NCBI RefSeq assembly: GCF_902713615.1
Contig: NC_052152.1
Span: 51,497,810 to 51,561,809, forward strand
Reading direction: 5' to 3'
DNA length: 64,000 bases
DNA from: Scyliorhinus canicula
Taxonomy: Eukaryota
Shown: in pieces, positions 42,958 through 63,389 of the stretch
How the letters are laid out: every line of letters begins with the position of its first letter
Numbering within the stretch: position 1 is the stretch's first letter
Notes under the pieces: model-generated
Seen by the model: the letters and a program-made list of their open reading frames with translations, nothing else
The model's database searches: none
What the model was told of the DNA's origin: nothing
Program-made: the position numbers and the translations under genes

Positions 42958-45794
42958 TGTGATGATATGATCTGCATACTCATCTGCCATTGGGCCAGAA
43001 TGTCGGCTTACCATTGGCCCTGGTCGGTCATGTGCCTCTCGACCGATTGGCCGAGAGGCTGAGTTAACCACGCCTCTATTAACGAGGTATAAATGCTCAA
43101 ACGCCTGACGATCGTCCCTTTCCACTGTAGACGATCGCAGAGCTGTGTTCTAGTTAATTAAAGCCAGACTTTGGTAAATCACTCGCCTCGCGTGCAATCG
43201 ATGGTACATCAATTTAATTAACTACGACTTTGAAGATGGAGTTCCGCATCAAGCCCGAATGCCTCCGCATCAGCCCGCAAACTCCGAACTCTGCAGAACT
43301 TTTCCAACTCTGGCTGACTTGCCTCGAAGGGTTCCGAGCATCTACAACCACCCCCCCCACCGGGGCACAGAAGCTGCACGTCCTCCACTCCAGCGTGGGT
43401 ATTGACGCTTATGCCATAATCAAAGAGGAAACGGATTTTGATGACGCTATACAAAAGCTAAAAGGACAATTCATCAAACCGATCAACAGGGTATTCGCTC
43501 GACATCTGCTGGCCACCAGAAAGCAGGTCCCCGGTGAGTCTCTAAGCCAATACGCCCGGGCACTCTATGCCCTGGGGAGAGGTTGCGCCTGTGTAGCGAT
43601 GTCCGCTACAGAGCACATGGAGCTACTCATCAGAGACGCTTACGTGGCTGGGATGCTGTCTCCCATGATCCGCCAGCGGATGCTGGAAAGAGACGAACTC
43701 AGTTTAACGGAGACGCTGACTCTCTCCGCCTCCCTGGAGGTCGCAGATCTAAGCGCTCGCACCTATGACCCTGGCCAGGGCGCCTCCTGGCACGCTTCCC
43801 ACCAGCCACCCGCCGCTCCCGGCCTCCCTCAGGCTTGTGCCACGGGGCGCCCCGATAAATCCGCGGTGCCCCGCTGCTACTTTTGCAGGTACGCTAAACA
43901 CCCTCGCTCGCGCTGCCCAGCCTGCTCCGCCCTCTGTAAGAGCTGCGGGAAGAAGGGCCACTACTCCACGGTCTGCCAGGCCAAAACGCTGGCTGCAGCG
44001 CTTCTGGAAGCTGCACAGCACTCTCCCCCCCTCCCCCAGGCCTCTGCAAACGGCCTGTGTGCCTCTCTCTCTCTCCTCCAGGGCCCCTCCAGCCGCTCCC
44101 GACTCGCGCCCCGCCAGCCGACAAGCGCACCTCCCTGACCCCTCCAGGCCTCTGCCAGCCTGCCCTGCACGTTTCTCCGCCGCCCCCGGGCCTCGGCGCC
44201 CGACCGGCTCGCCTCTCCGGGCCCTCCCGGTCCCTGCCTGCCCGCAGCGCGACTCTGCTCCCCCCGCCCCCGGCCCCCCGCACCCGGCCCGCGCGCCTTA
44301 CCTCCTCCCGCAGCTGCTGCACCTAACCGGCGTCCTGGAGCCGGCCTGAGCGTCCCCACAGCTGATGCACCTAACCGGCGTCCTGGAGCCAGCCTGCGCA
44401 TCCCCACAGCTGATGCATGTTACTCACCTCCTGGAGCCGGCCTGCGCGTCCCCACAGCTGCTACACCCGGCTCGCCTCCTGGAGCCGGCCTGCGCGCCTC
44501 ACCTCATCAGCTCACAGCGCCGGCAATGCTAGCTCCGCCACCAGCGGCCACGATGGCTTCCTGGGCGCCGCCATCCTGGGGTGCCGACCCCACGTGCGGG
44601 TCCTGGGCGCCGCCATCTTGGGGCCCCGACCCCACATGCGGATACTGGGCGCCGCCATCTTGGGGAACAGACCTCACATGTGGATCCTGGCCACCGACTT
44701 CCAGATCTGCCACGCAAGGTCCCTCCAGCATCGAATCGGACAGCGACGACGGATTTTCTCCACGGCTCGCGGCCGTTCACCTCACATATGGATCCTGGCC
44801 ACCGACTTCCAGATCTGCCACGCAAGGTCCCTCCAGCATCGACTCGGACGGCGACGACGGATTTTCTCCACGGCTCACGGCCGTTTAACTCGACCAGTCT
44901 CATCCACGCACGCTCGCCAAAACGACTACGCTGATCCACCTCAACGGCCACGAGACGGACTGCCTGCTGGACTCCGGGAGCACGGAAAGCTTTGTTCACC
45001 CCGACACGGTAAGACGCTGCGCGCTCCCTGTCCATCCCGTAACACGCAAAATCGGTTTAGCCTCAGGTTCGCACTCCGTCCACATCACCGGGTGCTGCAT
45101 CGCGGACCTCACGGTCCAAGGGAAGGTTTTTAAAAATTATAAATTCCTTGTCCTCCCTGACCTTTGCGCACCGGCACTCCTAGGACTGGACTTCCAGTGC
45201 AACCTGCAGAGCTTGACCTTTCAATTCGGCGGCCCTATACCCCCCCTCACTGTCTGCAGCCTCGCGTCCCTCAAAGTGGACCCTCCCTCCCTGTTTGCTA
45301 ACCTCACCCCCGATTGCAAACCCGTCGCCACATGGAGCAGACGGTACAGCGCCCAGGACCGATCCTTCATCAGGTCCGAGGTCCAGAGGTTGCTGACGGA
45401 AGGGGTCATCGAGGCCAGCAACAGCCCCTGGCGAGCCCAAGTGCTGGTGGTCCGGACGGGGGAGAAAAACCGGATGGTCATCGATTACAGCCAAACCATC
45501 AATCGGTTTACGCAACTGGACGCGTATCCTCTTCCCTGTATTTCTACCATGGTAAACGAGATCGCGACATACAAGGTCTTCTCAACTGTGGACCTTAAGT
45601 CCGCTTACCACCAGCTCCCCATCGACCGATTGGCCGAGAGGCTGAGTTAACCACGGCTCTATTAACGAGGTATAAATGCTCAAACGCCTGACGATCGTCC
45701 CTTTCCACTGTAGACGATCGCAGAGCTGTGTTCTAGTTAATTAAAGCCAGACTTTGGTAAATCACTCGCCTCGCGTGCAATCGATGGTACATCA
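42958..45794 (+). mobile_element. Internally deleted Gypsy/Ty3 element (element 1)
   Basis: 5' LTR 42958-43211; gag with two CCHC knuckles; protease LLDSGST; RT N-terminus joined directly to a partial 3' LTR (45622-45794). 5-bp flanks CGATG/GGATG. Confidence 0.92.
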
Positions 45795-45815
45795 GGATGT
45801 TTTGTTGGAGCGGAT

Positions 45816-46398
45816 TAGATTCAGAATGCAGCGGGATAGATTCCGAATGCAGCGGGATAGATTCCGAATGCAGCGGCATAGATCAGAATGCAGCGGCATA
45901 GATTCAGAGTGCAGCGGGATAGATTCAGAATGCAGCGGCATAGATTCAGAGTGCAGCGGGATAGATTCCGAATGCAGCGGGATAGATTCAGAGTGCAGCG
46001 GGATAGATTCCGAGTGCAGCGGGATAGATTCAGAGTGCAGCGGGATAGATTCCGAATGCCGCGAGATAGATTCAGAGTGCAGCCGGATAGATTCAGAATG
46101 CAGCGGGATAGATTCAGAATGCAGCGGGATAGATTCAGAGTGCAGCCGGATAGATTCAGAGTGCAGCCGGATAGATTCCGAATGCAGCCGGATAGATTCC
46201 GAATGCAGCCGGATAGATTCCGAATGCAGCCGGATAGATTCCGAATGCAGCCGGATAGATTCCGAATGCAGCCGGATAGATTCCGAATGCAGCGGGATAG
46301 ATTCAGAATGCAGCGGGATAGATTCCGAATGCAGCCGGATACATTCCGAATGCAGCGGGATAGATTCCGAATGCAGCGGGATAGATTCCGAATGCAGC
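45816..46398. repeat. 21-bp minisatellite, about 28 copies
   Basis: tagattc(c/a)gaatgcagc(g/c)gga units. Confidence 0.95.
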
Positions 46399-48224: not shown

Positions 48225-48510
48225 TGATGTACCATCAATTGAATGCGAGACGAGTTGCTGAACAAAAGTATGGCTTTAATCTACTTGATGTTAGCCCTGC
48301 GGTCGATTACAGTATAAGGACGGCCGCCGGGAGTACTGGGTATTTATACCGCGCCTTGGAGGTGGGGTTAACTCAGCCTCTCGACCAATCAGGGAGCCGT
48401 CACATGACTGGTCTCAACCAACCGGTCGAGAGGCACATGACCGACCAGGGTCAATGGTAAGCCGGTGTTCTGCACCAATGGCAGGCGGCTATGCTAATCA
48501 TCCCACCACA
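48225..48510 (-). mobile_element. Solo LTR related to elements 1 and 2
   Basis: Minus strand TGTGGTG...GATGGTACATCA; perfect 5-bp TSD CACCC; shares blocks with the element 1 LTR. Confidence 0.9.
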
Positions 48511-50963: not shown

Positions 50964-51530
50964 GGGCAGCATGGTAGTGCGGTGGTAAGCACTGTGGCTT
51001 CACAGCTTAGAACATAGATAGAACATAGAACAGTACAGCACAGAACAGGCCCTTCGGCCCTCGATGTTGTGCCGAGCAATGATCACCCTACTTAAACCCA
51101 CGTAACCCGTATACCCGTAACCCAACAATCCCCCACATTAACCTTACACTACGGGCAATTTAGCATGGCCAATCCACCTAACCCGCACATTTTTGGACTG
51201 TGGGAGGAAACCGGAGCACCCGGAGGAAACCCACGCACACAGGGGGAGGACGTGCAGACTCCTAGCTCTAGGGACCCAGGTTCGAATCCCGGCTTGGGCC
51301 ACTGTCTGTCCGGAGTCTGCACGTTCTCCCTGTGTCTGCCTGGGTTTCCTCCGGGTGCTCCGGTTTCCTTCCACAAATGTCGAAAGACATGCTTGTTAGG
51401 TGAATTGGACATTCTGAATTCTCCCTCTGACCCCGAACAGGCGCCGGAGTGTGGTGACTAGGGGATTTCACAGTAACTTCATTGCAGTGTTAATCTAAGC
51501 CTACTTGTGACAATAATAAAGATTATTATT
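50964..51530 (+). mobile_element. V-SINE split by an antisense HE1-like SINE (about 51009-51265)
   Basis: Head at 50964-51008; body resumes at 51268. Confidence 0.8.
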
Positions 51531-53945
51531 ACTAAGGCCACCGCCTGCGCAGCATAAATAGCCATGATGTGGACCTGTTGGACTTTAACCTGGTGTTGTA
51601 AGACTTCTTACAGCATAAATAGGCCACCCATCCACCCCGTCCCTAACCTCCCTCCAACACGCACAAGTGGGGCCAAATGGCCTCTTTCCATGTTGTAATC
51701 TCTATCATTGTTCTTTCCACCGCCGTGAAACTTTCTGGGTGGGGGGGATGGGTGGTTATTATAAAATGATTGTTACATTCACAGTTAAATACTTTCTGAA
51801 TAAATATATTCAGGAGCATTTCCGATATCGATTGTTCCACATCTACATATAACGTTACCACTCGCACTCAAATAGTCTGACTGATGGATAAACACAGATC
51901 ACATATATATTCAGTTTGTTATAAATATACACAACTACAAGAAACATTGAATAAAAACATACATTGCCGCTCAATCTTGCTCGATGTTAACGCGGAACAA
52001 TGAAACCTCCAACTCTGCTCAAACAGCGACATAAAAGTGGAAGTTGAGTGCCCAGAATTGAGTGCAACCACCTATGGAAAAGCAGCTTTCCAGCTCGTCA
52101 CTTGTGTCCAGGCAGACGGAGATTTTACAGGTTGCAAACCTTTTGGACCTCCCCTTAAACATGAGTGACAGACCATCCGGCTTTGAACCAGGACCGATAC
52201 AATTTCACTGCGGAAATGGGCAGCTATTGGTGCGTTTCTAACAAAATAGACACTTGAAAATCACAATAACGTGAAGAGTTAAGTATAGTGACGGTTAATT
52301 GTTGGATTTATGATTCGTTTTGTGACATAAATTACTGTACATATAAACATAGCTGAGTGAGTCCAGTTTACTCAATGAGTTTAGAGCGCCAGAAATCAAT
52401 TACATATGTGAAATTATTATTTACATATATTGTGACCCAAGTGGGCGTGTTAAAAACTGAGCAGTTACAGAAAAAGAATCGAAACTGAAAATGGACCGAT
52501 AATATTGGAAATGCCCTGAACTGCGCAGTATTGCCAGCTGTTTCAATTCTGATTTGCAGCATTCTCAATACAGAGCTCCTGCTGAAATTAGAAGACTTAC
52601 ATTTATACATGAAAGGAGAATAGTTAATGTACAGGCTGTACATTACAGCTGTCAGCTACACCCCACCCTCTGCCAATGCCAGGGGACTTCAAGCCAAAAA
52701 TCTGTGCCGAAGCCAATGTTACACATTCGACAACAAGGCTTTGCAAATTTGAAGATTCTACTATGGTAGATTTTCCATTTCATTCACACGAGTTTCTACT
52801 ACATTCCAATCAAGGGAAATATCAAGTAAAAGAATGGAGTTTATTCAAAGGAACAAACTGGAGAATGTGTGTTGGCAGCAATGTAATAAACAGCAGAAAT
52901 ATCCTGAACCTTTTTTGAGGTATTCAGTTGTCAAGAAGACTGTGTAAAGTGATGCAAGGTGGTATGTTCAGATTTCCAAAATGCATTTGACAAAATTCTT
53001 CTATTTATCTCTGAAGGTGAAATGGCTGAGAGTAAAAGGAATGAGCTAGTTAGATTTTCATCAATGTGGGAAAATGTAGTTTTGTTAGAAACAGCTTAAG
53101 GTTTCAGCTTTGAGACAGGGTCACCTGGACTCAAAACTTTAGCTATTTTCTATCCCTACAGATGCTGCCAGACCTGCTAAGATTTTCCAGCATTTTCTCT
53201 TTGGTTTCAGATTCCAGCAGCCACAGTAATTTGTTTTTATATAGCTTAAAGTTTAATTTCTCTAGAAATAAGCCAACAAAATAATGTATCCTTAGGTAAT
53301 GTTAACTATTGCTAGTTGAAAAAGGCTACGATTCCTTCATAATAGTCCAAGCACTGGATAGACACTAAAAACAAATAACCATATCGCACAGTATTGTCGT
53401 TGTATTGAGCCTTGTTCAATACTCCAAGAGACAACAGGATAGACATTATGAACAGCTCACTAACAGCCCTTAGCAAAAAGCTTTAGACATAAATAGCTGA
53501 TAACCAACTAAAGACATGATTTTATTGCTTGAAGGCCAGAAATTAGATGTGAGGGAGTTATAAAATCAGTCATGGGAAACAGCCTATTTATGGCGCATTG
53601 CATGGAATGTACAATATAGTCCAGGCCATTCTCCCAACAGTCCATGCCAGCGTCCATGCTCCACTTGGGCCTCCTTGCATCTTTACACAGCTATACCCAC
53701 CATTCTAACTATCTATTAACTTCACCCTCGTCTACTGTCTAGTTTTTCCTTAAACTAATCAATCACTTCAACCACTCCCTGTGGGAGCAGGTTCCAAACT
53801 CTTCGCACTTTTGTCTGATGATCTTTCTTTTGAATTCACGATTGGTTGTCTTAATGATTATCTGACATTGATGGCCTCCAGGCTGAGGAAATGTGATGTA
53901 AAAGCCTGGTTGATCAAGGCTAGAAGGTATTTCTGGAAGTTCAAG
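51268..53945. repeat. Local segmental duplication, unit A
   Basis: Colinear with 54936-56193 + 60738-61838 + 63390-63477, including the same SINE copy with shared diagnostic bases (ccttccacaaatgtcgaaagacatgc). Confidence 0.9.
51957..52516 (-). promoter_or_regulatory. Candidate promoter and first exon, copy A
   Basis: GAGCGGCAAT|gtatgt (exon ends 51963) completes ATG with the leader exon. Upstream: CCAAT (52226-52230), IRF-type GAAACTGAAA (52481-52490), kB-like GGAAATGCCC (52507-52516). Confidence 0.45.
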
Positions 53946-54331: not shown

Positions 54332-54564
54332 CAGCGCCGGCCCTAGGGTTGCTGGCGCCCCGGGCAAGCTGAACTTCGGCGCCCTTGGGGGGGGGGCCGG
54401 GTGGGGGGCCGAGGGGGGGGGCCGAGGGAGGGGGGGCGGGGCCGAGGGAGGGGGGGCCGAGGGAGGGGGGGCCGAGGGAGGGGGGGCCGAGGGAGGGGGG
54501 GCCGAGGGAGGGGGGGCGGGGCCGAGGGAGGGCCAAGGGGGGGGCGGGGCCGAGGGAGGGGGGG

Positions 54565-54607
<43 letters not shown>

Positions 54608-54794
54608 CGGGGGGGGACCGAGGCGGGGGGAGCGGACCGAGCGGGGGGGGCCGCCCTGGGGGAGGGCGGCCACCGCGCATGCGCTGGTTGGCACCGGCCC
54701 AACTGCGCATGCGCGAGACCCAAGTCTCTGGCGCCCCCTAGCACATGGCGCCCTGGGCGACTGCCCGAGTTGCCGGTGCCTTGAGCCGGCCCTG
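54332..54794 (-). mobile_element. Second copy of the same hAT-type MITE
   Basis: Reverse orientation of 2318-2728; perfect 8-bp TSD GTGTTTAT; internal gccgagggaggggg repeats and a long poly(G) run. Confidence 0.9.
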
Positions 54795-55490
54795 GTGTTT
54801 ATTGTATGTCCTACCTTTCTCATGTATAGAACAATCTGCCTGGTCTGTATACAGGCCAACACTTTTCACTGCGTCTCAGTACACGTGACAATAAATCTAA
54901 ATCTACATATATTACAAATGGATTTCAATCCAGATACAGCTCCAGGGACCCAGGTTCGATTCCCGGCTTGGGCCACTGTCTGTGCGGAGTCTGCTCGTTC
55001 TCCCTGTGTTTGCCTGGGTTTCCTCCAGGTTTTCCGGTTTCCTTCCACAAATGTCGAAAGACATGCTTATTAGGTGTATTGGAGATTCTGAATTCTCCCT
55101 CTGTGTACCCGATCAGGAGCCGGATAGTGACTAGGGGATTTCACTAGGGGATTAAACAGGCCACCCATCCACCCAGTCCCGAACCTCCCTCCAACACGCA
55201 CAAGTGGGGCCGAATGGCCTCTTTCCATGTTGTAATCTCTATCATTGTTCTTTCCACCGCCGTGAAACTTTCTGGGTGGGGGGGGGGGGTTATTATAAAA
55301 TGATTGTTACATTCACAGTTAAATACTTTCTGAATAAATATACCCAGGAGAATTTCCGATATCGATTGTTCCACATCTACATATAACGTTACCACTCGCA
55401 ATCAAATAGTCTGACTGATGGATAAACACAGATCACATATATATTCAGTTTGTTATAAATATACACATCTACAAGAAACATTGAATAAAA

Positions 55491-56046
55491 ACATACATTG
55501 CCGCTCAATCTTGCTCGATGTTAACGCGAAACAATGAAACCTCCAACTCTGCTCAAACAGCGACATAAAAGTGGAAGTTGAGTGCCCAGAATTGAGTTAA
55601 ACCACCTATGGAAAAGCAGCTTTCCAGCTCGTCACTTGTGTCCAGGCAGACGGAGATTTTACAGGTTGCAAACCTTTTGGACCGCCCCTTAAACATGAGT
55701 GACAGACCATCCGGCTTTGAACCAGGACCGATACAATTTCACTGCGGAAATGGGCAGCTATTGGTGTGTTTCTAACAAAATAAACACTTGAAAATCACAA
55801 TAACGTGAAGAGTTAAGTATAGTGACGGTTAATTGTTGGATTTATGATTCGTTTTGTGACATAAATTACTGTACATATAAACATAGCTGAGTGAGTCCAG
55901 TTTACTCAATGAATAAGTTTAGAGCGCCAGGAATCAATTACCTATGTGAAATAATTATTTACATACATTGTGACCCAAGTGGGCGAGTTAAAAACTGAGC
56001 AGTTACAGAAAAAGAAACGAAACTGATAATGGACCGATTATATTGG
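55491..56046 (-). promoter_or_regulatory. Promoter/first-exon copy B
   Basis: Near-identical to copy A; donor after 55497; IRF-like tract altered to GAAACGAAACTGATA. Confidence 0.4.
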
Positions 56047-56193
56047 AAATGCCCTGAACTGCGCAGTATTGGCAGCTGTTTCAATTCTGATTTACAGCAT
56101 TCTCAATACAGAGCTCCTGCTGAAATTAGAAGACTTACATTTATACATGAAAGGAGAATAGTTAATGTACAGGCTGTAAATTTGAGCTGTCCC

Positions 56194-59100
56194 TGTGGTG
56201 AATGTAATATGATAATTCACACTGTCTTTGTAAGCGCAGTAGCGTTATCTGACCACTAGGGGGAGTAGCTCTGGGAATGCTCGAGATTGTACAGGGCTCC
56301 ACCCTTGGCTCCGCCCATGACTCCTCCCCCTAGTGCTGCTGTATAAATACCCTTGTCCAGAGTCAGCCTGCAGTTCACTGAGAGTTCATCAACGGGTAAC
56401 AGGCTGGCTCTGTAATAAGTCGATTAAAGCCTATATTCATATCGGAAACACGTGTCTGGTGACTTGATGGTTCCATCAATTTAATCGACTTAAGAACAGC
56501 AAGATCAATCATGGAATCAGCCCTCAAGCCTGGACGCCTGGAACTCGACTCGCAGGATGCAGAGGCTAAAGAAATCTTCTCCCACTGGCTGCGGTGCATC
56601 AAGGCCTACCTGGCAGAAGCGAGCACAGCCGAAACGACAGAGGAACAGAAGTTGAGTCTATTGCACGCGAGGGTGAGCCACAGAATCTCTACACAACTAA
56701 ACTCGGCCGGTTCATATACTGCGGCGCTAGCAGTACTCGATAAGATATATGTGAGGCCCATTAACGAAGCTTACGCACGCCATGTGTTCACGACTCGCCG
56801 CCAACGGCCTACAGAATCACTCGCCGAATTTCTAAGGGAATTCAATAATTTGTTAAATGACTGTAATTATGAAGCTGTTACCGTGGCTGATCACCGAGAA
56901 CTTGCTGTACGCGATGTTTTTGTAGCGGGCCTCAGGTCTAATTATGTGCGCCAACAATTGTTGGAGAAGGGGGCCAAAGACTTAGGAATGACTGTGGAAG
57001 CTGCTACCACGATGGAGGTCTCCTTGCGCAGCCTTAACTCGTTCCCCGCGGACCCCGCGACCCAATCATGGGCCCGACCAGACGACTCCCCCAGGCCTGT
57101 GCTACCGCCGGTCGCATGCACACCATGCTGCCTCAGCAGGCCACTATGCTGCTTCCGGCCAGACCAGCACCCGCGTCAGCACTGCCCGGCCGCCAAACGG
57201 CACCTGCAGCAGCAGCAGCTGCGGCGGAAAGGCCAGTACGCTAAGAGTGGTGCCTCGCAAAAAGGGCCCCAGCTTCCAACTCCCCAGCGGCACGAAGTAT
57301 CGCTCCCCAGGTCCCGCGGGCCCAAAAACGCTGCACCTATGCCCCGATCTCCGCCCCATCCAGCCACCTGCAATCCATGGGAGGCCGCCATCTGGACGCA
57401 AACACTCCACCACGTGGCCGGGGCCACGTGCGACTCATGGGGGCCGCCATCTTGGACGCCACCTTCCTCTGCCGCCCGCACTACGTGCAATCCACGGGCC
57501 CGACCTGCATCTCCCGCGCTCGGACCACTCATCGGAAGAATACGACTATGAACTCAGAGGGCAGTCATCATGGGGCCACTCCGGCACAGCTGATCGAGCC
57601 GCCGACTACCCGCAACTCAGCGCAGTCACTCTGGACCAATCACGCCTGAAGCATCTGCGAAATTCGATGGCAGAGGTCCAAATCAACGGGTACAAAACGC
57701 CATGCCTCTTCGACTCCGGGAGCACTGAGAGCTTCATACATCCAGACCTGGTAAGACGCTGTTCGCTCCCCGTTTTCCCCGTGCAGCAAACTATCTCGCT
57801 TGCTTCAGGCTCCCATTCGGTCCAAATCCAGGGGCGCACCGCCGCGGCACTCACAATCCGAGGCGCTAGCTACTCAAAATTCAAACTCTACGTTTTGCCC
57901 GAACTCTGCGCGCCACTCTTATTAGGCCGAGAGTTCCAATGTAACCTCAAGAGCCTCACCCTCAGCTTCGGCGGGTCCCTGCCCCCACTCACTATCTGCA
58001 GCCTCGCTACGCTGCGAATCCCCCCCCCCCTCCTCTCTTCGCCAATCTCACAAAGGACTGTAAACCCGTAGCCACTCATAGCAGGCGGTATAGCCTGCAG
58101 GATAGGGTATTTATCAGAGCAGAGGTCCGAAGGCTTCTCAGTGAGGGGATTATAGAGGCCAGCAATAGTCCCTGGAGAGCTCAGGTGGTGGTCGTTAAGA
58201 CCGGGGGAAAATTCCGCATGGTTGTCGACTATAGTCAGACCATAAATAGATTTACGCTCCTCGACGCATATCCCCTCCCCAGGATTGCAGACATGGTAAA
58301 CCAGATCGGCCAGTACCGGCTCTTTTCCACGGCGGATCTGAAGTCTGCATACCACCAGCTCCCAATCCGCCCGGAGGACCGCCACTACACGGCATTCGAG
58401 GCCAATGGCCGCCTCTTCCATTTCCTCTGGGTCCGTTTCGGCGTCACTAATGGGGACTCGGTGTTCCAACGAGCAATGGACCGAATGGTGGACCAGTACG
58501 GGCTGCTGGCCACGTTTCTGTACTTGGACAATGTCACCATCTGCGGCTATGACCAGCAGGACCACGACGCCAACCTCCACCGATTTCTCCAGACGGCACA
58601 GAAACTGAATCTCACGTATAACAAGGAGAAATGAGTTTTCCGCACAACCAGACTAGCCATCCTTGGCTATGTCGTGGAAAACGGAGTCCTGGGCCCAGAC
58701 CCGGACCGTATGCGCCCCCTCTTAGATCTCCCCCTCCCCCATTGCCCTCAAACAGTGCTTGGGTTTCTTTTCCTACTACGCCCAATGGGTCCCTCAATAT
58801 GCGGACAAAGCCCGCCCACTCTTTAGGGCCACGCGATTTCCCCTGTCAGCCGAGGCACGCCAGGCCTTTGACGGCATCAAGGAAGACATCGCCAAAGCGG
58901 TCATGCGGGCGGTGGATGAATCCACTCCATTTCAGGTAGAGAGCGATGCCTCAGAGGTAGCTCTTGCAGCCACATTAAATCAGGCAGGGAGACCAGTCGC
59001 ATTCTTCTCCCGTACACTCTCCGCTTCAGAACTCCGACACTCCTCAGTCGGGAAAGAAGCACAAGCCATTGTGGAGGCTATCCGTTACTGGAGGCACTAC

Positions 59101-60737
59101 CTACCAGGTAGGAGGTTCACCCTCATCACCGACCAAAGATCGGTTGCCTTCATGTTCGACAACTCGCAAAGGGGCAAAATTAAAAACGACAAAATTCTGA
59201 GGTGGAGGATCGAACTCTCCACCTACAATTACGACATTAAGTATCGACCCGGGAAGCTCAACGAGCCTCCGGATGCCCTATCCCGCGGGACATGCGCCAG
59301 CGCACAGATTGACCGATTGAAAATCATCCACAATGACCTCTGCCACCCGGGGGGTCACCCGGCTTGCCCACTACATCAGGGCCCGAAACCTGCCTTTCTC
59401 CAACGAGGAGGTAAAAGCGGTCACCAGGGACTGCCCGATCTCTGAAGAGTGCAAACCGCACTTCTATAGACCAGACAGGGCCCACCTGGTCAAGGCTTCT
59501 AGGCCCTTTGAACGCCTTGTGATTGATTTCAAAGGGCCACTCCCCTCAACTAACAAGAACGTTTACTTTTTAAACGTCGTAGATGAGTTCTCCCATTTCC
59601 CATTCGCTATCCCGTGCTACGACATGACCTCCCACACAGTCATTAGGGCCCTGCATAGCATCTTCACCCTGTTTGGTTTCCCCAGCTACGTACACAGCGA
59701 CCGGGGTTCGTCCTTCATGAGCGACGCGCTGCGTCAGTACCTGCTCGACAAGGGCATTGCCTCGAGCAGGACTACCAGCTACAACCCCAGGGGGAACGGG
59801 CAGGTGGAGAGGGAGAACACGACGGTCTGGAAGACCGTCCTACTGACTCTCCGGTCGAGAGAGCTCCAAGTCTCCCAGTGGCATGAAGTCCTCCCAGACG
59901 CGCTCCACGCTATTAGGTCCCTTTTGTGCACAGCGACCAATCAGACCCCTCACGAGAGGCTCTTCATTTTTTCCAGGGGCACTACCACGGGGGTCTCACT
60001 TCCGGCATGGCTGAGGACACCGGGCCCCGTACTTCTGAGGAAACACATCAGGGCACACAAAACCGACCCCCTTGTTGAAAAGGTGCGCCTGCTCCACTCC
60101 AACCCCCAGTACGCATTCGGCGAGTTCCCTAACGGCCGTCAGGACACGGTATCCCTCCGGGATCTGGCACCCACCGGATCCAGCGCCCCCTCTACCCCCA
60201 CAGAAGGACCTCTCACCCTACACCCCATGCTGCCGCCCCCTCCAGTCCCCGGTTGAGAGTATGAAGCTCAGATACAACCCTCCCTGGAGTCCGCCATCGT
60301 ACCCCAGCACACAAGACCCATCCAGCCACCGCAAGAGGCTGCAACCCCGGTGCTCTGCAGATCACAGCGGACAATTCGACCACCGGACAGACTGAAGTTG
60401 TAGACCACCACCCCCGCCGGACTTGATTTTTTTTTTGCAGGGGGTGAATGTGGTGAATGTAACATGATAATTCACACTATGTCTTTGTAAGCACAGTAGT
60501 GTTATCTGACCACTAGGGGGAGTAACTCTGGGAATGCTCAGGAGATTGTACAGGACTCCACCCTTGGCTCCGCCCACGACTCCTCTCCCTCGTGCTGATG
60601 TATAAATACCCTTGTCCAGAGTCAGCCTGCAGTTCACTGAGAGTTCATCAACGGGTAACAGGCTGGCTCTGTAGTAAGTCGATTAAAGCCTATATTCATA
60701 TCGGAAACACGTGTCTGGTGAATTGATGGTTCCATCA
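56194..60737 (+). mobile_element. Full-length but defective Gypsy/Ty3 LTR retrotransposon (element 2)
   Basis: LTRs 56194-56478 and 60449-60737 (TG...CA). gag from 56511, protease LFDSGST, RT, RNase H ESDAS...DALSR, integrase IDFKGP/HSDRG/QVERE. PPT-like gcagggggtgaa; several frameshifts and a stop. The empty site is visible in unit A. Confidence 0.95.
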
Positions 60738-61838
60738 GTCAGCTACACCCCATCCTCTGCCAATGCCAGGTGACTTCAAGCCAAAAATCTGTGCCGAACT
60801 CAATGTTACACATTCGACAGCAAGGTTTTGCAAATTTGAAGATTCTAATATGATAGATTTTCCATTTCATTCACACAAGTTTCTGCCACATTCCAATCAA
60901 GGGAAATATTAAGAAAAATAATGGAGTTTATTCAAAGGAACAAACTGGAGGATTTGTGTTGGTTGCAATGTAATAAACAGCAGGAATATCCTGATCCACC
61001 AGTATCCTTAACCTTTTTTGAGGTATTCATTTGTCAAGAAGACTATGTAAAGTGATACAAGGTGGTACTTTCAGATTGCCAAAATGCATTTGACAAAATT
61101 CTTCTATTTATCTCTGAAGGTTAAATGGCTGAGGGTAAAAAGAATGAGCTGGCTGGAGTTTTATCAATTTGGGGAAGTTTAGTTTTATTAGAAACAGCTT
61201 AAAGTTTCATTTCTCTAGAAACAAGCCAACAAAATAATTATTCTTGGGTGATGTCAACTGTTGCTGGTTGGAAAAGGCTACGATTCCTTCATAATAGTCC
61301 AAGCACTGGATAGACACTGAAAACAAATAACCATACCGCACAGCATTGTCGGTGTTTTTAATTTTGTCCAATAGAGAATGAGCCCACTTCAACAGGATAG
61401 ACATTATGAACAGCTCGTTAACAGCCCTTAGTGAAGAGCTTTAGACATAAATAGCTAATAACCCAAACAATAAAATTGTGTCTATTAGTTAAAGGCCAGA
61501 AATGAGGTGTGAGGGAGTTGTAAAATCAGTCAAAGGATCAGCCGACAGATGTTGAGTTACTTGGAATATACAAAAGAGAAACAGGTCATTCGCCCCAGCA
61601 GTCCATGGCAGTGTCCATGCTCCACTTGGGCTTCTTCGCAACTTTACACAGCTATACCCACCATTCTAACCATCGATTAACTTCATCCTCGTCTGCTGTA
61701 GTTTTGCCTTAAATGAATCAATCCTATTCGCTTCAACCATTCCCTGATGAGAGCAGGTTCCAAACTCTTCGCACTTTTGTCTGATGATCTTTTTTCTGAA
61801 TTCCTGACTGGTTATACTGCTGAATATCTGGCATTGAT

Positions 61839-63389
61839 TTTTAAAAAAAAATAATTTTTATTGAAATTTTTTGAAAAATGTATAGTAACAGAATAATAAC
61901 AATAATAAACACCCCCCGGCACCCGTAACAAAGCATTTAACAAACCCCCCCCCCACCCCCCCACCCCCAACCCAATAAACAACAAAATAAATTAACAATA
62001 ATGAAATTAACATAAACAATACCCCCCTGAAACCTCCCCCCCCCCCCCCCCCCCCCGGGTTCCTGCTGCTGCTGACCTAGTTCCCTATCATTGAGCCAGA
62101 AAGTCGAGGAAAGGCTGCCACCGCCTAAAGAACCCTTGTACCGACCCCCTCAGGGCAAATTTGACCTTCTCCAGCTTAATGAATCCCGCCATGTCATTGA
62201 TCCAGGTCTCCACGCTCGGAGGTCTCGCATCTTTCCATTGCAACAAGATCCTCCGCCGGGCTACTAGGGACGCAAAGGCCAAAACACCGGCCTCTTTCGC
62301 CTCCTGCACTCCCGGCTCCACCACAATCCCAAATATCGCGAGTCCCCAGCCTGGTTTGACCCTGGATCCTACCACCCTCGACACCGTCCTTGTTACCCCC
62401 TTCCAGAATTTCTCCAGTGCCGGGCATGCCCAAAACATATGGGCATGGTTCGCTGGGCTCCCCGAACACCTGATGCGCCTGTCCTCACCCCCAAAAAACC
62501 TGCTCATCCTCATCCCGGACCGTATATAAGCCCTGTGCAGTACCTTGAACTGGATGAGGCCAAGCCTCGCACATGAAGAGGAGGAGTTCACCCTCTCCAG
62601 GGCGTCCGCCCATGTCCCCTTCCTCAATCTGCTCCCCCAGCTCCACTTCCCACGTAGCCTTCAGCTCCTCTACCGACGCCTCCTCCACCTCCTGCATCAC
62701 CTGGTAGATGTCAGACACCTTCCCATCCCCGACCCACACCCCCGAAAGCACCCTATCCCTTACCCCTCCCCCCCCCCCGGGGGCAGCAAAGATAACCCCT
62801 CCACCTGCCGCCTAGCAAACGCCTTGACCTGAAGGTACCTGAACATATTCCCTGGGAGGAGCTCAAACTTCTCCTCTAGCTCACCCAGGCTCGCAAACCT
62901 ACCGTCAATGAACAGGTCTCACAACTTCCTTATGCCCGCCCTGTGCCACCCCAGGAACCCGCCATCAATGTTCCCTGGGACAAACCGGTGGTTACCCCGC
63001 AGCGGGGCCTCCACCGAGCCCCCCACTTCCCCCCTGTGTCGCCTCCACTGCCCCCAAATCTTGAGGGTAGCCGCCACCACCAGGCTCATGGTGTACCTTG
63101 TTGGAGGGAGCGTCAATGGCGCTGTTACCAGTGCCTTCAGGCTCGTGCTTCCACAGGATACCATCTCCATCCGTTTCCATGCTGCCGCCTCACCATCCAT
63201 TACCCACTTGCGTACCATCGAGACGTTAGCCGCCCAATAGTACCAAGAGAGGTTGGGCAGTGCCAGCCCCCCTCTATCCCTGCCCCGCTCCAAAAAGACC
63301 CTCCTCACCCTCGGAGTCCCGTGCGCCCAAACAAATCCCGTGATGCTGCTGTTCACCCTCCTAAAAAAGGCCCTCGGAATGAAAATGGC
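61839..63389 (-). mobile_element. 5'-truncated L1 in duplication unit B
   Basis: ORF2 C-terminal homology; TSD ATATCTG(G/A)CATTGAT; empty site present in unit A near 53860. Confidence 0.93.

What the first reader, a model, noticed from the sequence alone, without database searches (positions are those of the whole stretch)
56416..56492. Gypsy elements with no tRNA PBS: a co-varying self-complementary segment sits in its place
Seen in sequence: neither Gypsy element has a TGG-type PBS after the 5' LTR. In element 2, one base after the LTR-terminal CA, TTTAATCGACTTA (56480-56492) is the perfect 13-nt reverse complement of TAAGTCGATTAAA (56416-56428) in its own LTR. In element 1, TTTAATTAACTA (43213-43224) is the perfect 12-nt reverse complement of TAGTTAATTAAA (43151-43162). 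The two families differ here, yet the pairing is kept (TCGA vs TTAA compensated). Both duplexes end exactly at the last A of the ATTAAA poly(A) signal. That signal lies 49-50 nt from the LTR end in both elements and in the solo LTR at 48225-48510. A small hairpin (TTGATGG-TT-CCATCAA) spans the LTR boundary. Established: Tf1 and sushi-group chromoviruses self-prime with the first about 11 nt of their RNA, cut by RNase H. Inference: these twin-CCHC, non-chromodomain elements fold back and prime from an internal R segment about 35-45 nt downstream of the TATA-predicted start. The stem can form only at the 5' end of the RNA, so it would also hide the 5' poly(A) signal while leaving the 3' one free. 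I do not recall this being described for this lineage, but I cannot search the literature.
Basis: partly seen in the sequence, partly recalled or inferred. Interest (0 to 1): 0.88.

Follow-up and report, generated by a model that had tools for sequence, protein, structure and literature searches.

The report
Self-priming Gypsy retrotransposons in sharks
Two decayed shark retrotransposons have no tRNA primer site; the bases just after their terminal repeat pair perfectly with the repeat's own poly(A)-signal segment, and 24 related families from other animals show the same layout, so this lineage most likely primes its own reverse transcription, as yeast Tf1-type elements do.

Summary
In both elements the LTR ends in CA. 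One spacer base later, 12-13 nt are the perfect reverse complement of an LTR segment 49-50 nt upstream that ends at ATTAAA. No TGG-type tRNA site follows either LTR.

I collected relatives through gag and pol searches: sea cucumber, mussel, aphid, Trichinella and marine metagenomes. All 26 distinct families carry the same layout with a family-specific perfect duplex of 9-19 bp. Cross-family matches average 5 nt (maximum 10). Close family pairs differ by compensatory changes. Reads of the shark family show a paired polymorphism, 56421 C>A with 56487 G>T.

The best explanation is self-primed reverse transcription of the Tf1 kind. The host lineage is not a chromovirus: twin CCHC knuckles, no chromodomain, Mag-like.

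Two points stay open. RNA reads gave no transcript start or poly(A) site, so I cannot say whether the primer arm is internal to the RNA (TATA and Inr motifs suggest so in vertebrates) or is its 5' end. Poly(A)-signal hiding is untested and cannot be universal, because a canonical signal ends at the arm end in only 12 of 26 families.

I found no description of this for the lineage in the searchable literature. The scan noted the same thing earlier on other pieces of this genome (for example s1-195922).

The parts
56194..56478 (+). Element 2, 5' LTR (285 nt, TG..CA)
   Evidence: About 95% identical to the 3' LTR. Start and end fixed.
56342..56349 (+). Element 2 TATA box (TATAAATA). An Inr-like GCAGTTC has its A at 56372.
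   Evidence: Read from the sequence. Function is inferred.
56416..56428 (+). Element 2 5' arm (proposed self-primer). Its last six bases, 56423-56428, are ATTAAA.
   Evidence: Perfect 13-nt reverse complement of 56480-56492. Pairs in the minimum-energy fold.
56464..56479 (+). Small hairpin TTGATGG-TT-CCATCAA across the LTR end, next to the primer site
   Evidence: Weaker versions exist in E1 and L008.
56480..56492 (+). Element 2 primer-binding position: the 3' arm, one spacer base (56479) after the LTR
   Evidence: Family reads show 56487 G>T paired with 56421 C>A.
56511..57551 (+). Element 2 gag ORF (346 aa; zinc knuckles decayed)
   Evidence: Weak Pfam Retrotrans_gag match. HMMER found 1502 relatives.
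57247..60256 (+). Element 2 pol, broken by frameshifts, in the order protease, RT, RNase H, integrase; no chromodomain
   Evidence: Pfam, three-frame reading. The integrase is 55% identical to P0058.
60427..60448 (+). Element 2 polypurine tract region, ending GGGGGTGAA
   Evidence: The same junction occurs in distant relatives.
60449..60737 (+). Element 2 3' LTR, with its copy of the arm at 60675-60687
   Evidence: It is followed by flank that matches the empty-site paralog.
42958..43211 (+). Element 1 5' LTR (TATA at 43088-43094)
43151..43162 (+). Element 1 5' arm, ending in ATTAAA
   Evidence: Perfect 12-nt reverse complement of 43213-43224
43213..43224 (+). Element 1 primer-binding position (3' arm), one spacer base after the LTR
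43236..44138 (+). Element 1 gag with intact twin CCHC knuckles (43875, 43935); 32% identical to E2 gag
45622..45794 (+). Element 1 partial 3' LTR (arm copy at 45734-45745). RT coding sequence runs straight into it, so the element is internally deleted.
48225..48510 (-). Solo LTR of a third family. Its arm-equivalent AAGTAGATTAAA is at 48275-48286, with TATA 62 nt upstream.
52643..52653 (+). Uninterrupted paralog of element 2's insertion site
   Evidence: Repeat families D4 and D6 and the sequence

Best explanation
These are members of a widespread animal lineage of Ty3/Gypsy retrotransposons. The lineage is not a chromovirus: it has twin CCHC knuckles and is Mag-like. It starts minus-strand DNA synthesis without a tRNA.

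Proposed mechanism (inferred by analogy with Tf1):
1. In the element's RNA, a 9-19 nt segment of the 5' LTR pairs with its exact complement, which begins one or two bases after the LTR's terminal CA. The segment almost always ends in TAAA and is often the poly(A) hexamer itself.
2. The RNA is cut at the 3' end of that segment, after ...AAA and usually before GC or AC.
3. The new 3'-OH is extended through the spacer and U5.
4. The short strong-stop DNA jumps to the 3' R.
5. The plus strand then copies the primer, so the primer site is rewritten from the arm in every cycle. This keeps the duplex perfect while it drifts between families.

Shown here: the anatomy, its conservation and the co-variation. 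Inferred: the cut, the priming and the copy-back step. Whether the arm is the RNA's 5' end or lies 30-45 nt inside it is not resolved.
For: - Perfect duplexes in both elements, improbable by chance.
- The same layout in all 26 distinct families. Sources are shark, a close metagenomic relative of the shark gag (L008), Apostichopus, Mytilus, Macrosiphum, Trichinella, and TARA, JGI and ENA contigs.
- Self matches are 9-19 nt (median 13). The 646 cross-family comparisons average 5.2 nt, with a maximum of 10.
- Pair positions 4-13 each carry 2-4 different Watson-Crick pair types.
- Close family pairs L014/L026 and L016/L017 differ by one change in the arm and the matching change in the primer site.
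- In reads of the E2 family, the only common variant in each arm is 56421 C>A and 56487 G>T. These are the two sides of one base pair.
- The arms pair in the minimum-energy fold in all 23 families folded.
- LTR ends are verified by 3' LTRs and target-site duplications.
- No TGG follows any of these LTRs.
- The mechanism itself is established for Tf1 and inferred for relatives from the same kind of complementarity (PMC4600332, PMC10085805).
Against: - There is no direct evidence of priming.
- RNA reads show no LTR-driven start or poly(A) site. They lie on both strands and run on into varied flanks.
- Whole-leader fold energies do not differ from shuffles (z -1.8 to +0.5), because the stems are AU-rich.
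- If the RNA starts at the TATA-predicted site, the primer would be 45-57 nt long. Copying all of it would leave a non-homologous tail, so a second cut or trimming would be needed. No such step is known for Tf1.
- Both window copies are decayed.
Confidence: 0.8

Rival explanations
1. The primer arm is internal to R, 30-45 nt downstream of the RNA start. The 5'-only stem also hides the promoter-proximal poly(A) signal while leaving the 3' copy free. This refines the best explanation rather than excluding it.
For: - A consensus TATA lies 62-74 nt upstream of the arm, with Inr-like motifs about 31-36 nt after the TATA, in E1, E2, the solo LTR and L008.
- The arm ends exactly at AATAAA or ATTAAA in 12 of 26 families, and at a one-base variant in 9 more.
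- The 3' arm exists only after the 5' LTR.
- An earlier scan note (s1-198237), which I did not check, reports a 46-bp fold-back that could be a run-on copy of a long primer.
Against: - No start site or poly(A) site could be read from RNA.
- Families L002, L009 and L010 have only 57-65 nt of LTR ahead of the arm. L002 has TATTTAA 27 nt upstream and a TCAGT whose A is the arm's first base.
- Most invertebrate LTRs have no TATA.
- Pairing beyond the arm falls to chance after 2-3 bases.
- Four families have no hexamer-like arm end, and several carry the canonical signal 4-11 nt downstream.
Confidence: 0.35
2. The stem is only a structural or regulatory RNA element (poly(A) control, packaging, dimerisation or translation). 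Reverse transcription is primed by something else that has not been recognised.
For: - The stem overlaps the poly(A) hexamer in about half of the families.
- Skipper elements show that unexplained non-tRNA priming exists (PMC5006619).
Against: - The 3' arm always begins 1-2 nt after the LTR's CA, exactly where a primer site must lie.
- Nothing else between the LTR and the gag ATG (14-37 nt in most families) could serve as a primer site.
- No TGG is present.
- Family-specific perfect complementarity is what primer copy-back predicts.
Confidence: 0.1
3. Conventional priming by a tRNA, a half-tRNA or a tRNA fragment.
For: - Mosquito Mag elements use tRNA-Leu or tRNA-Ser sites (PMC3286476).
- Half-tRNA priming exists in copia-type elements (PMC6317226).
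Against: - None of the 26 families has TGG after the LTR.
- The post-LTR bases share only T(T)TA. Otherwise they differ completely between families while matching their own LTR.
- A primer ending in AAA-3' is not a tRNA 3' end.
- No tRNA gene or Rfam match lies in or near the region.
Confidence: 0.03
4. Chance matches of AT-rich, partly palindromic sequence, or an assembly artefact.
For: The arms are AT-rich, and TTAATTAA in E1 is self-complementary.
Against: - Shuffle tests.
- The same layout in 26 families from independent assemblies and metagenomes.
- The arm is present in both LTRs.
- Reads from four runs cover it.
Confidence: 0.01

Closest known systems
Tf1, Tf2 and Tj1 of fission yeasts (self-primed reverse transcription)
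   Same: - No tRNA site.
- An LTR-derived RNA segment pairs with the site just after the 5' LTR's CA.
- The duplex is about 11-13 bp.
- Extra small helices lie next to the duplex (the 'pretzel').
- The primer is copied into the cDNA end (PMC4600332, PMC10085805, PMC11042837).
   Different: - Tf1-type elements are chromoviruses with a chromodomain. In them the primer is the first bases of the mRNA.
- Here there is no chromodomain and there are twin CCHC knuckles.
- The arm ends in TAAA and often is the poly(A) hexamer.
- In vertebrate families the arm probably lies 30-45 nt inside the RNA, though this is unproven.
- Cleavage and priming have been demonstrated for Tf1 only.
Vertebrate Tf1/sushi group (sushi-ichi and relatives; Butler et al. 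2001, cited in PMC6317226 and PMC10085805)
   Same: Vertebrate Gypsy elements predicted to self-prime from complementarity between the LTR and the post-LTR site.
   Different: A different lineage: chromoviruses, usually with one CCHC (PMC2577118). I could not read the original paper to compare arm positions.
Plant Tcn1 (Gypsy) and TAR (Copia) lineages with predicted self-priming
   Same: Self-priming inferred from sequence in whole lineages (PMC6317226).
   Different: These are plant lineages. Tcn1 is related to Tf1/sushi, and TAR belongs to another superfamily.
Mag clade of Ty3/Gypsy (Mag, SURL, Jule)
   Same: - Animal-wide distribution, including vertebrates.
- About 4-5 kb in length.
- Two CCHC knuckles (PMC2577118, PMC4131045).
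- LTR termini TGTNAT...AYANAACA (PMC3601003, Table 3) fit the LTRs seen here.
   Different: The mosquito Mag elements described in the literature have tRNA-Leu, tRNA-Ser or tRNA-Arg sites (PMC3286476). The families here have none. Clade placement was not tested with reference sequences.
Dictyostelium Skipper
   Same: A Gypsy element without a TGG primer site.
   Different: Skipper has a polypyrimidine stretch and no complementary LTR segment (PMC5006619).

Membership tests
Ty3/Gypsy (Metaviridae) | gag, then protease, RT, RNase H and integrase in that order, between LTRs | tested here: met
   Pfam domains in order. Relatives have a single ORF of about 1200-1270 aa. The best solved relative is the Ty3 Gag-Pol (E 5e-57).
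Self-priming LTR retrotransposons (mechanistic class) | No tRNA-type site; the bases just after the 5' LTR are complementary to a segment of the same LTR | tested here: met
   26 of 26 families, 9-19 bp perfect.
Self-priming LTR retrotransposons (mechanistic class) | RNase H cut of the RNA duplex and extension of the released 3' end | not testable with these tools
   Needs biochemistry or cDNA end mapping.
Tf1/sushi group | Chromodomain at the integrase C-terminus (a chromovirus sublineage) | tested here: not met
   No chromo domain in E2. None appears in the precomputed Pfam lists of the 120 listed relatives, nor in the C-terminal tails inspected.
Tf1/sushi group | Self-primer is the very 5' end of the mRNA | tested here: inconclusive
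   RNA reads gave no start site. TATA and Inr motifs place the start 30-45 nt upstream in vertebrate families. Short-LTR families fit a start at the arm.
Tf1/sushi group | Three-duplex 'pretzel' around the primer duplex | tested here: inconclusive
   The arm duplex plus a hairpin stacked after the 5' arm appears in about 16 of 23 folds. A hairpin before the primer site is seen in the shark families. The geometry differs from the published description (PMC10085805).
Tf1/sushi group | Placement by RT/RNase H/integrase phylogeny | not tested
   No reference sequences (Tf1, sushi, GyDB set) were available in the tools.
Mag clade | Two CCHC knuckles in the nucleocapsid | tested here: met
   E1. P0058, P0168, P0173, P0205, P0044, P0001, P0005, P0285 and P0289 also have two. 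A few relatives have one.
Mag clade | Small element (about 4-5 kb), short LTRs, termini TGTNAT...AYANAACA | tested here: met
   LTRs are 112-302 nt. Starts include TGTGATGA, TGTGGTGT and TGTTATAT. Ends include ACAACA, AGAACA and ACTACA, compared with PMC3601003 Table 3. The shark LTRs end in CATCA.
Mag clade | tRNA-Leu or tRNA-Ser primer site, as in the mosquito Mag elements described | tested here: not met
   No TGG site in any family, compared with PMC3286476.
Mag clade | Placement by phylogeny with Mag, SURL and Jule references | not tested
Assignment rests on features and on excluding chromovirus, Gmr1 (different domain order) and Cer (about 7 kb) (PMC4131045).

The most novel reading that the evidence does not exclude
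A pan-metazoan Gypsy lineage that is not a chromovirus replicates without any tRNA. Its primer is the LTR segment that carries the poly(A) signal. In vertebrate families this primer is cut out of the inside of the RNA leader, which needs two cuts or trimming. One stem would then both start reverse transcription and silence the 5' poly(A) signal.
Probability: 0.3. Interest if true: 0.8.

Novelty: new variant of a known kind. Interest (0 to 1): 0.62.

Why it matters
Self-priming is treated as the hallmark of the Tf1/sushi chromoviruses. The only other lineage for which the papers I read predict it is the plant TAR (Copia) lineage.

- If a second, animal-wide Gypsy lineage uses it, then tRNA-independent priming either arose more than once or is older than thought.
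- LTR-annotation tools that require a tRNA site would systematically miss or misjudge these elements.
- These elements would also escape host defences that target tRNA primer sites, such as 3' tRNA fragments.
- The tie between the primer and the poly(A) signal, and the question of an internal primer, give concrete and testable questions about how RNase H selects its cut.

Tried and rejected
- RNA reads laid on all of element 2 and then on 56300-56560. Coverage is low, lies on both strands, is continuous across U3 and R, and drops 3-4 fold at the LTR end into varied flanks. No transcript start or poly(A) tail could be read. No conclusion about expression is drawn.
- The first word-indexed search with E2 gag found a single shark protein. 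DNA for shark, ray and one ENA contig could not be fetched because the files are too large. No elasmobranch copies outside the window were examined, apart from L008, a contig of unknown host.
- Whole-leader fold energies are not better than shuffles. The evidence is the specific complementarity, not the energy.
- The TATA census ahead of the arm is informative only for the four vertebrate-type LTRs. Most invertebrate LTRs have no TATA.
- Pairing beyond the arms is raised only at the second and third outward positions and then falls to chance. There is no long extended helix.
- There are no tRNA genes in the window and no Rfam family at the site.
- The original Tf1 papers, Springer 1991 (SURL) and Volff 2001 (Jule) are not held. 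I could not check whether those papers mention this layout.
- Clade placement by phylogeny was not possible without reference sequences.
Full report
**What is in the window**

Element 2 spans 56194-60737. Its LTRs are about 95% identical. The 3' end of the LTR is fixed independently. The sequence on both sides of the element is a copy of a repeat whose uninterrupted version lies at about 52643-52653.

Between the LTRs lie a gag ORF and a frameshifted pol in the order protease, RT, RNase H, integrase. There is no chromodomain.

Element 1 spans 42958-45794. It has an intact gag with two CCHC knuckles but is internally deleted, because RT coding sequence runs straight into the middle of the 3' LTR. 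The two gag proteins are 32% identical, so these are two well-separated families. A solo LTR of a third family lies at 48225-48510 on the minus strand.

- In element 2 the LTR ends ...CCATCA at 56478. After one spacer base, 56480-56492 is the perfect reverse complement of 56416-56428.
- In element 1, 43213-43224 is the perfect reverse complement of 43151-43162.
- LTR shuffles give such matches about once in 10,000 for each element.
- Both 5' arms end at the last A of ATTAAA, 49-50 nt from the LTR end. The solo LTR has the same spacing.
- The hairpin at 56464-56479 is real.
- No TGG lies between the LTR end and the gag ATG.

**Relatives**

An exhaustive HMMER search with the N-terminal 211 residues of E2 gag found 1502 relatives. 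The closest are catshark, ray and hound-shark proteins. More distant ones come from Apostichopus, Trichinella, a mantis shrimp and many marine metagenome contigs.

A pol search with one full-length relative (P0058, 1246 aa) gave over 1000 proteins, mostly of about 800-1350 aa and many of them full-length gag-pol ORFs. They share 51-73% pol identity and include hits from Mnemiopsis, Mytilus, Trichuris and an aphid. None of the 120 listed proteins has a chromodomain. E2's integrase is 55% identical to P0058, and a hound-shark protein is 47% identical over pol. All of this is one lineage.

I fetched DNA for 12 loci by exact protein look-up. A degenerate-pattern scan of metagenome contigs gave 80 more.

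**The layout is lineage-wide and co-varies**

- Of 40 usable loci, 33 show a perfect duplex at the LTR junction. A 34th hit (L049) is probably spurious because its gag start was misplaced. Six decayed copies carry the same layout with one or two mismatches.
- In each, the LTR ends in CA, 1-2 spacer bases follow, and then comes a stretch starting T(T)TA. That stretch is the perfect reverse complement of a segment of the same LTR; 20-66 nt separate the end of that segment from the start of the stretch.
- There are 26 distinct arm sequences, 9-19 nt long (median 13). Each matches only its own LTR. The longest match of one family's site to another family's LTR averages 5.2 nt and never exceeds 10, over 646 comparisons.
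- The three pairs nearest the LTR are nearly invariant A-T pairs. Positions 4-13 each carry two to four different Watson-Crick pair types.
- Two pairs of close families (L014/L026 and L016/L017) differ by one base in the arm and by the matching base in the site.
- Reads from four RNA runs that represent many copies of the E2 family show exactly one common variant in each arm: 56421 C>A and 56487 G>T. These are the two partners of one base pair, and their frequencies rise and fall together across runs.
- The arms pair in the minimum-energy fold in all 23 families folded.

This rules out chance. It also rules out a shared host tRNA, because the sites share only T(T)TA.

**Most likely mechanism**

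The anatomy is that of Tf1-type self-priming. An LTR-derived RNA segment anneals to the site just after the 5' LTR, RNase H cuts at the end of the duplex, and the new 3' end primes minus-strand DNA (PMC4600332, PMC10085805).

Here the cut would fall after ...AAA. The next bases are GCC, GCT, GCG or ACC in 21 of 26 families. In about 16 of 23 folds they begin a small co-varying hairpin stacked on the arm duplex, which may mark the cut site.

From general knowledge of retroviral replication, plus-strand strong-stop DNA copies the primer. A self-primer would therefore rewrite the primer site from the arm in each cycle. This explains why the duplex is perfect in every family yet differs between families. 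It also explains the paired polymorphism. These steps are inference; nothing here shows priming directly.

**Where the RNA starts**

This remains unresolved. E1, E2, the solo LTR and L008 have a consensus TATA 62-74 nt upstream of the arm and an Inr-like motif about 31-36 nt after the TATA.

Three observations point the other way:
- Three families have only 57-65 nt of LTR ahead of the arm.
- One has TATTTAA 27 nt upstream and a TCAGT whose A is the arm's first base.
- Pairing stops sharply 2-3 bases beyond the arm. Under the copy-back idea this argues for a primer no longer than the arm.

RNA reads did not help.

**Poly(A) link**

A canonical AATAAA or ATTAAA ends exactly at the arm end in 12 of 26 families, and one base earlier in one more. 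One-base variants (GTTAAA, TTTAAA, GATAAA) occupy that place in nine. Four families have nothing hexamer-like there, and four carry a canonical hexamer 4-11 nt downstream.

The overlap is therefore frequent but not universal. Hiding the 5' signal is a possible secondary role at best, and it is untested.

**Lineage**

- Two CCHC knuckles.
- No chromodomain.
- Elements of 4-5 kb, mostly with a single ORF.
- LTRs of 112-302 nt.
- LTR termini that fit the published Mag motifs (PMC3601003 Table 3; PMC2577118; PMC4131045).

These features point to the Mag group and away from chromoviruses, Gmr1 and Cer. This was not tested by phylogeny. The mosquito Mag elements described in the literature use tRNA sites (PMC3286476), so the self-complementary site marks at least a distinct part of that group.

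**Novelty**

Seven full-text searches found self-priming described only for the Tf1/sushi chromoviruses, plant Tcn1 and plant TAR. None concerned Mag-like or other non-chromoviral animal Gypsy elements. Older subscription papers on SURL, Jule and Mag could not be read.

Earlier notes of this scan report the same layout on other pieces of this genome. Two follow-ups reached the same reading (s1-195922 and s1-243447). I tested the claim independently here, and it held.

**Verdict**

The feature is real and lineage-wide. It is best explained as self-primed reverse transcription in a Gypsy lineage outside the group known for it. That makes it a new variant of a known mechanism. The position of the primer in the RNA and any role in poly(A) control remain open.

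Noticed in passing
43163-43175 (E1); L006, L014, L018, L019, L026, L031, L072, L076 just after the 5' arm: A small hairpin begins directly after the 5' arm and co-varies between families (ACCT..AGGT, GCCT..AGGC, GCCA..TGGT, ACCA..TGGT). It appears in about 16 of 23 folds. E2 lacks it. It may mark the cut site or act in polyadenylation.
   Followed up: partly
51264-53738 compared with 54938-56191 plus 60730-61699: Element 2 is inserted in one copy of a repeated unit of about 2.4 kb, and the other copy is uninterrupted. The 5' junction has two extra C bases (..GCTGTC CC|TGTGG), so the target-site duplication is not clean.
   Followed up: partly
45809-46398 and 54387-54616: A 21-nt tandem array (28 copies, 92% matches) starts 15 nt after element 1's 3' LTR. 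A G-rich 15-nt array lies upstream of element 2.
   Followed up: no
60440-60451; L002, L006, L007, L010, L012 at the PPT-LTR junction: The junction GGGG(G)TGAA|TGT between the polypurine tract and the 3' LTR recurs in shark, sea cucumber, mussel, Trichinella and metagenomic relatives; the aphid element (L011) has the variant GGGAGAA|TGT.
   Followed up: no
56283, 56332, 56347 (loose ends of reads): Many RNA reads match E2's LTR only downstream of these points and then continue with other sequence. LTR subfamilies with different U3 parts therefore exist in this genome.
   Followed up: no
56164-60755: RNA-seq reads cover the decayed element on both strands at low depth and run from the LTR into varied flanks. 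This looks like read-through of many copies rather than LTR-driven transcription.
   Followed up: partly
38309-38796 compared with 61951-62467: Another dispersed repeat, 70-77% identical, lies upstream of element 1 and downstream of element 2. It was not identified.
   Followed up: no
L006, L011, L012 (sea cucumber, aphid, mussel loci): The LTR pairs of these relatives are 100% identical and have clean 5-bp target-site duplications, so these insertions are recent. The shark copies are 95% (E2) and 99% (E1, partial) identical.
   Followed up: partly
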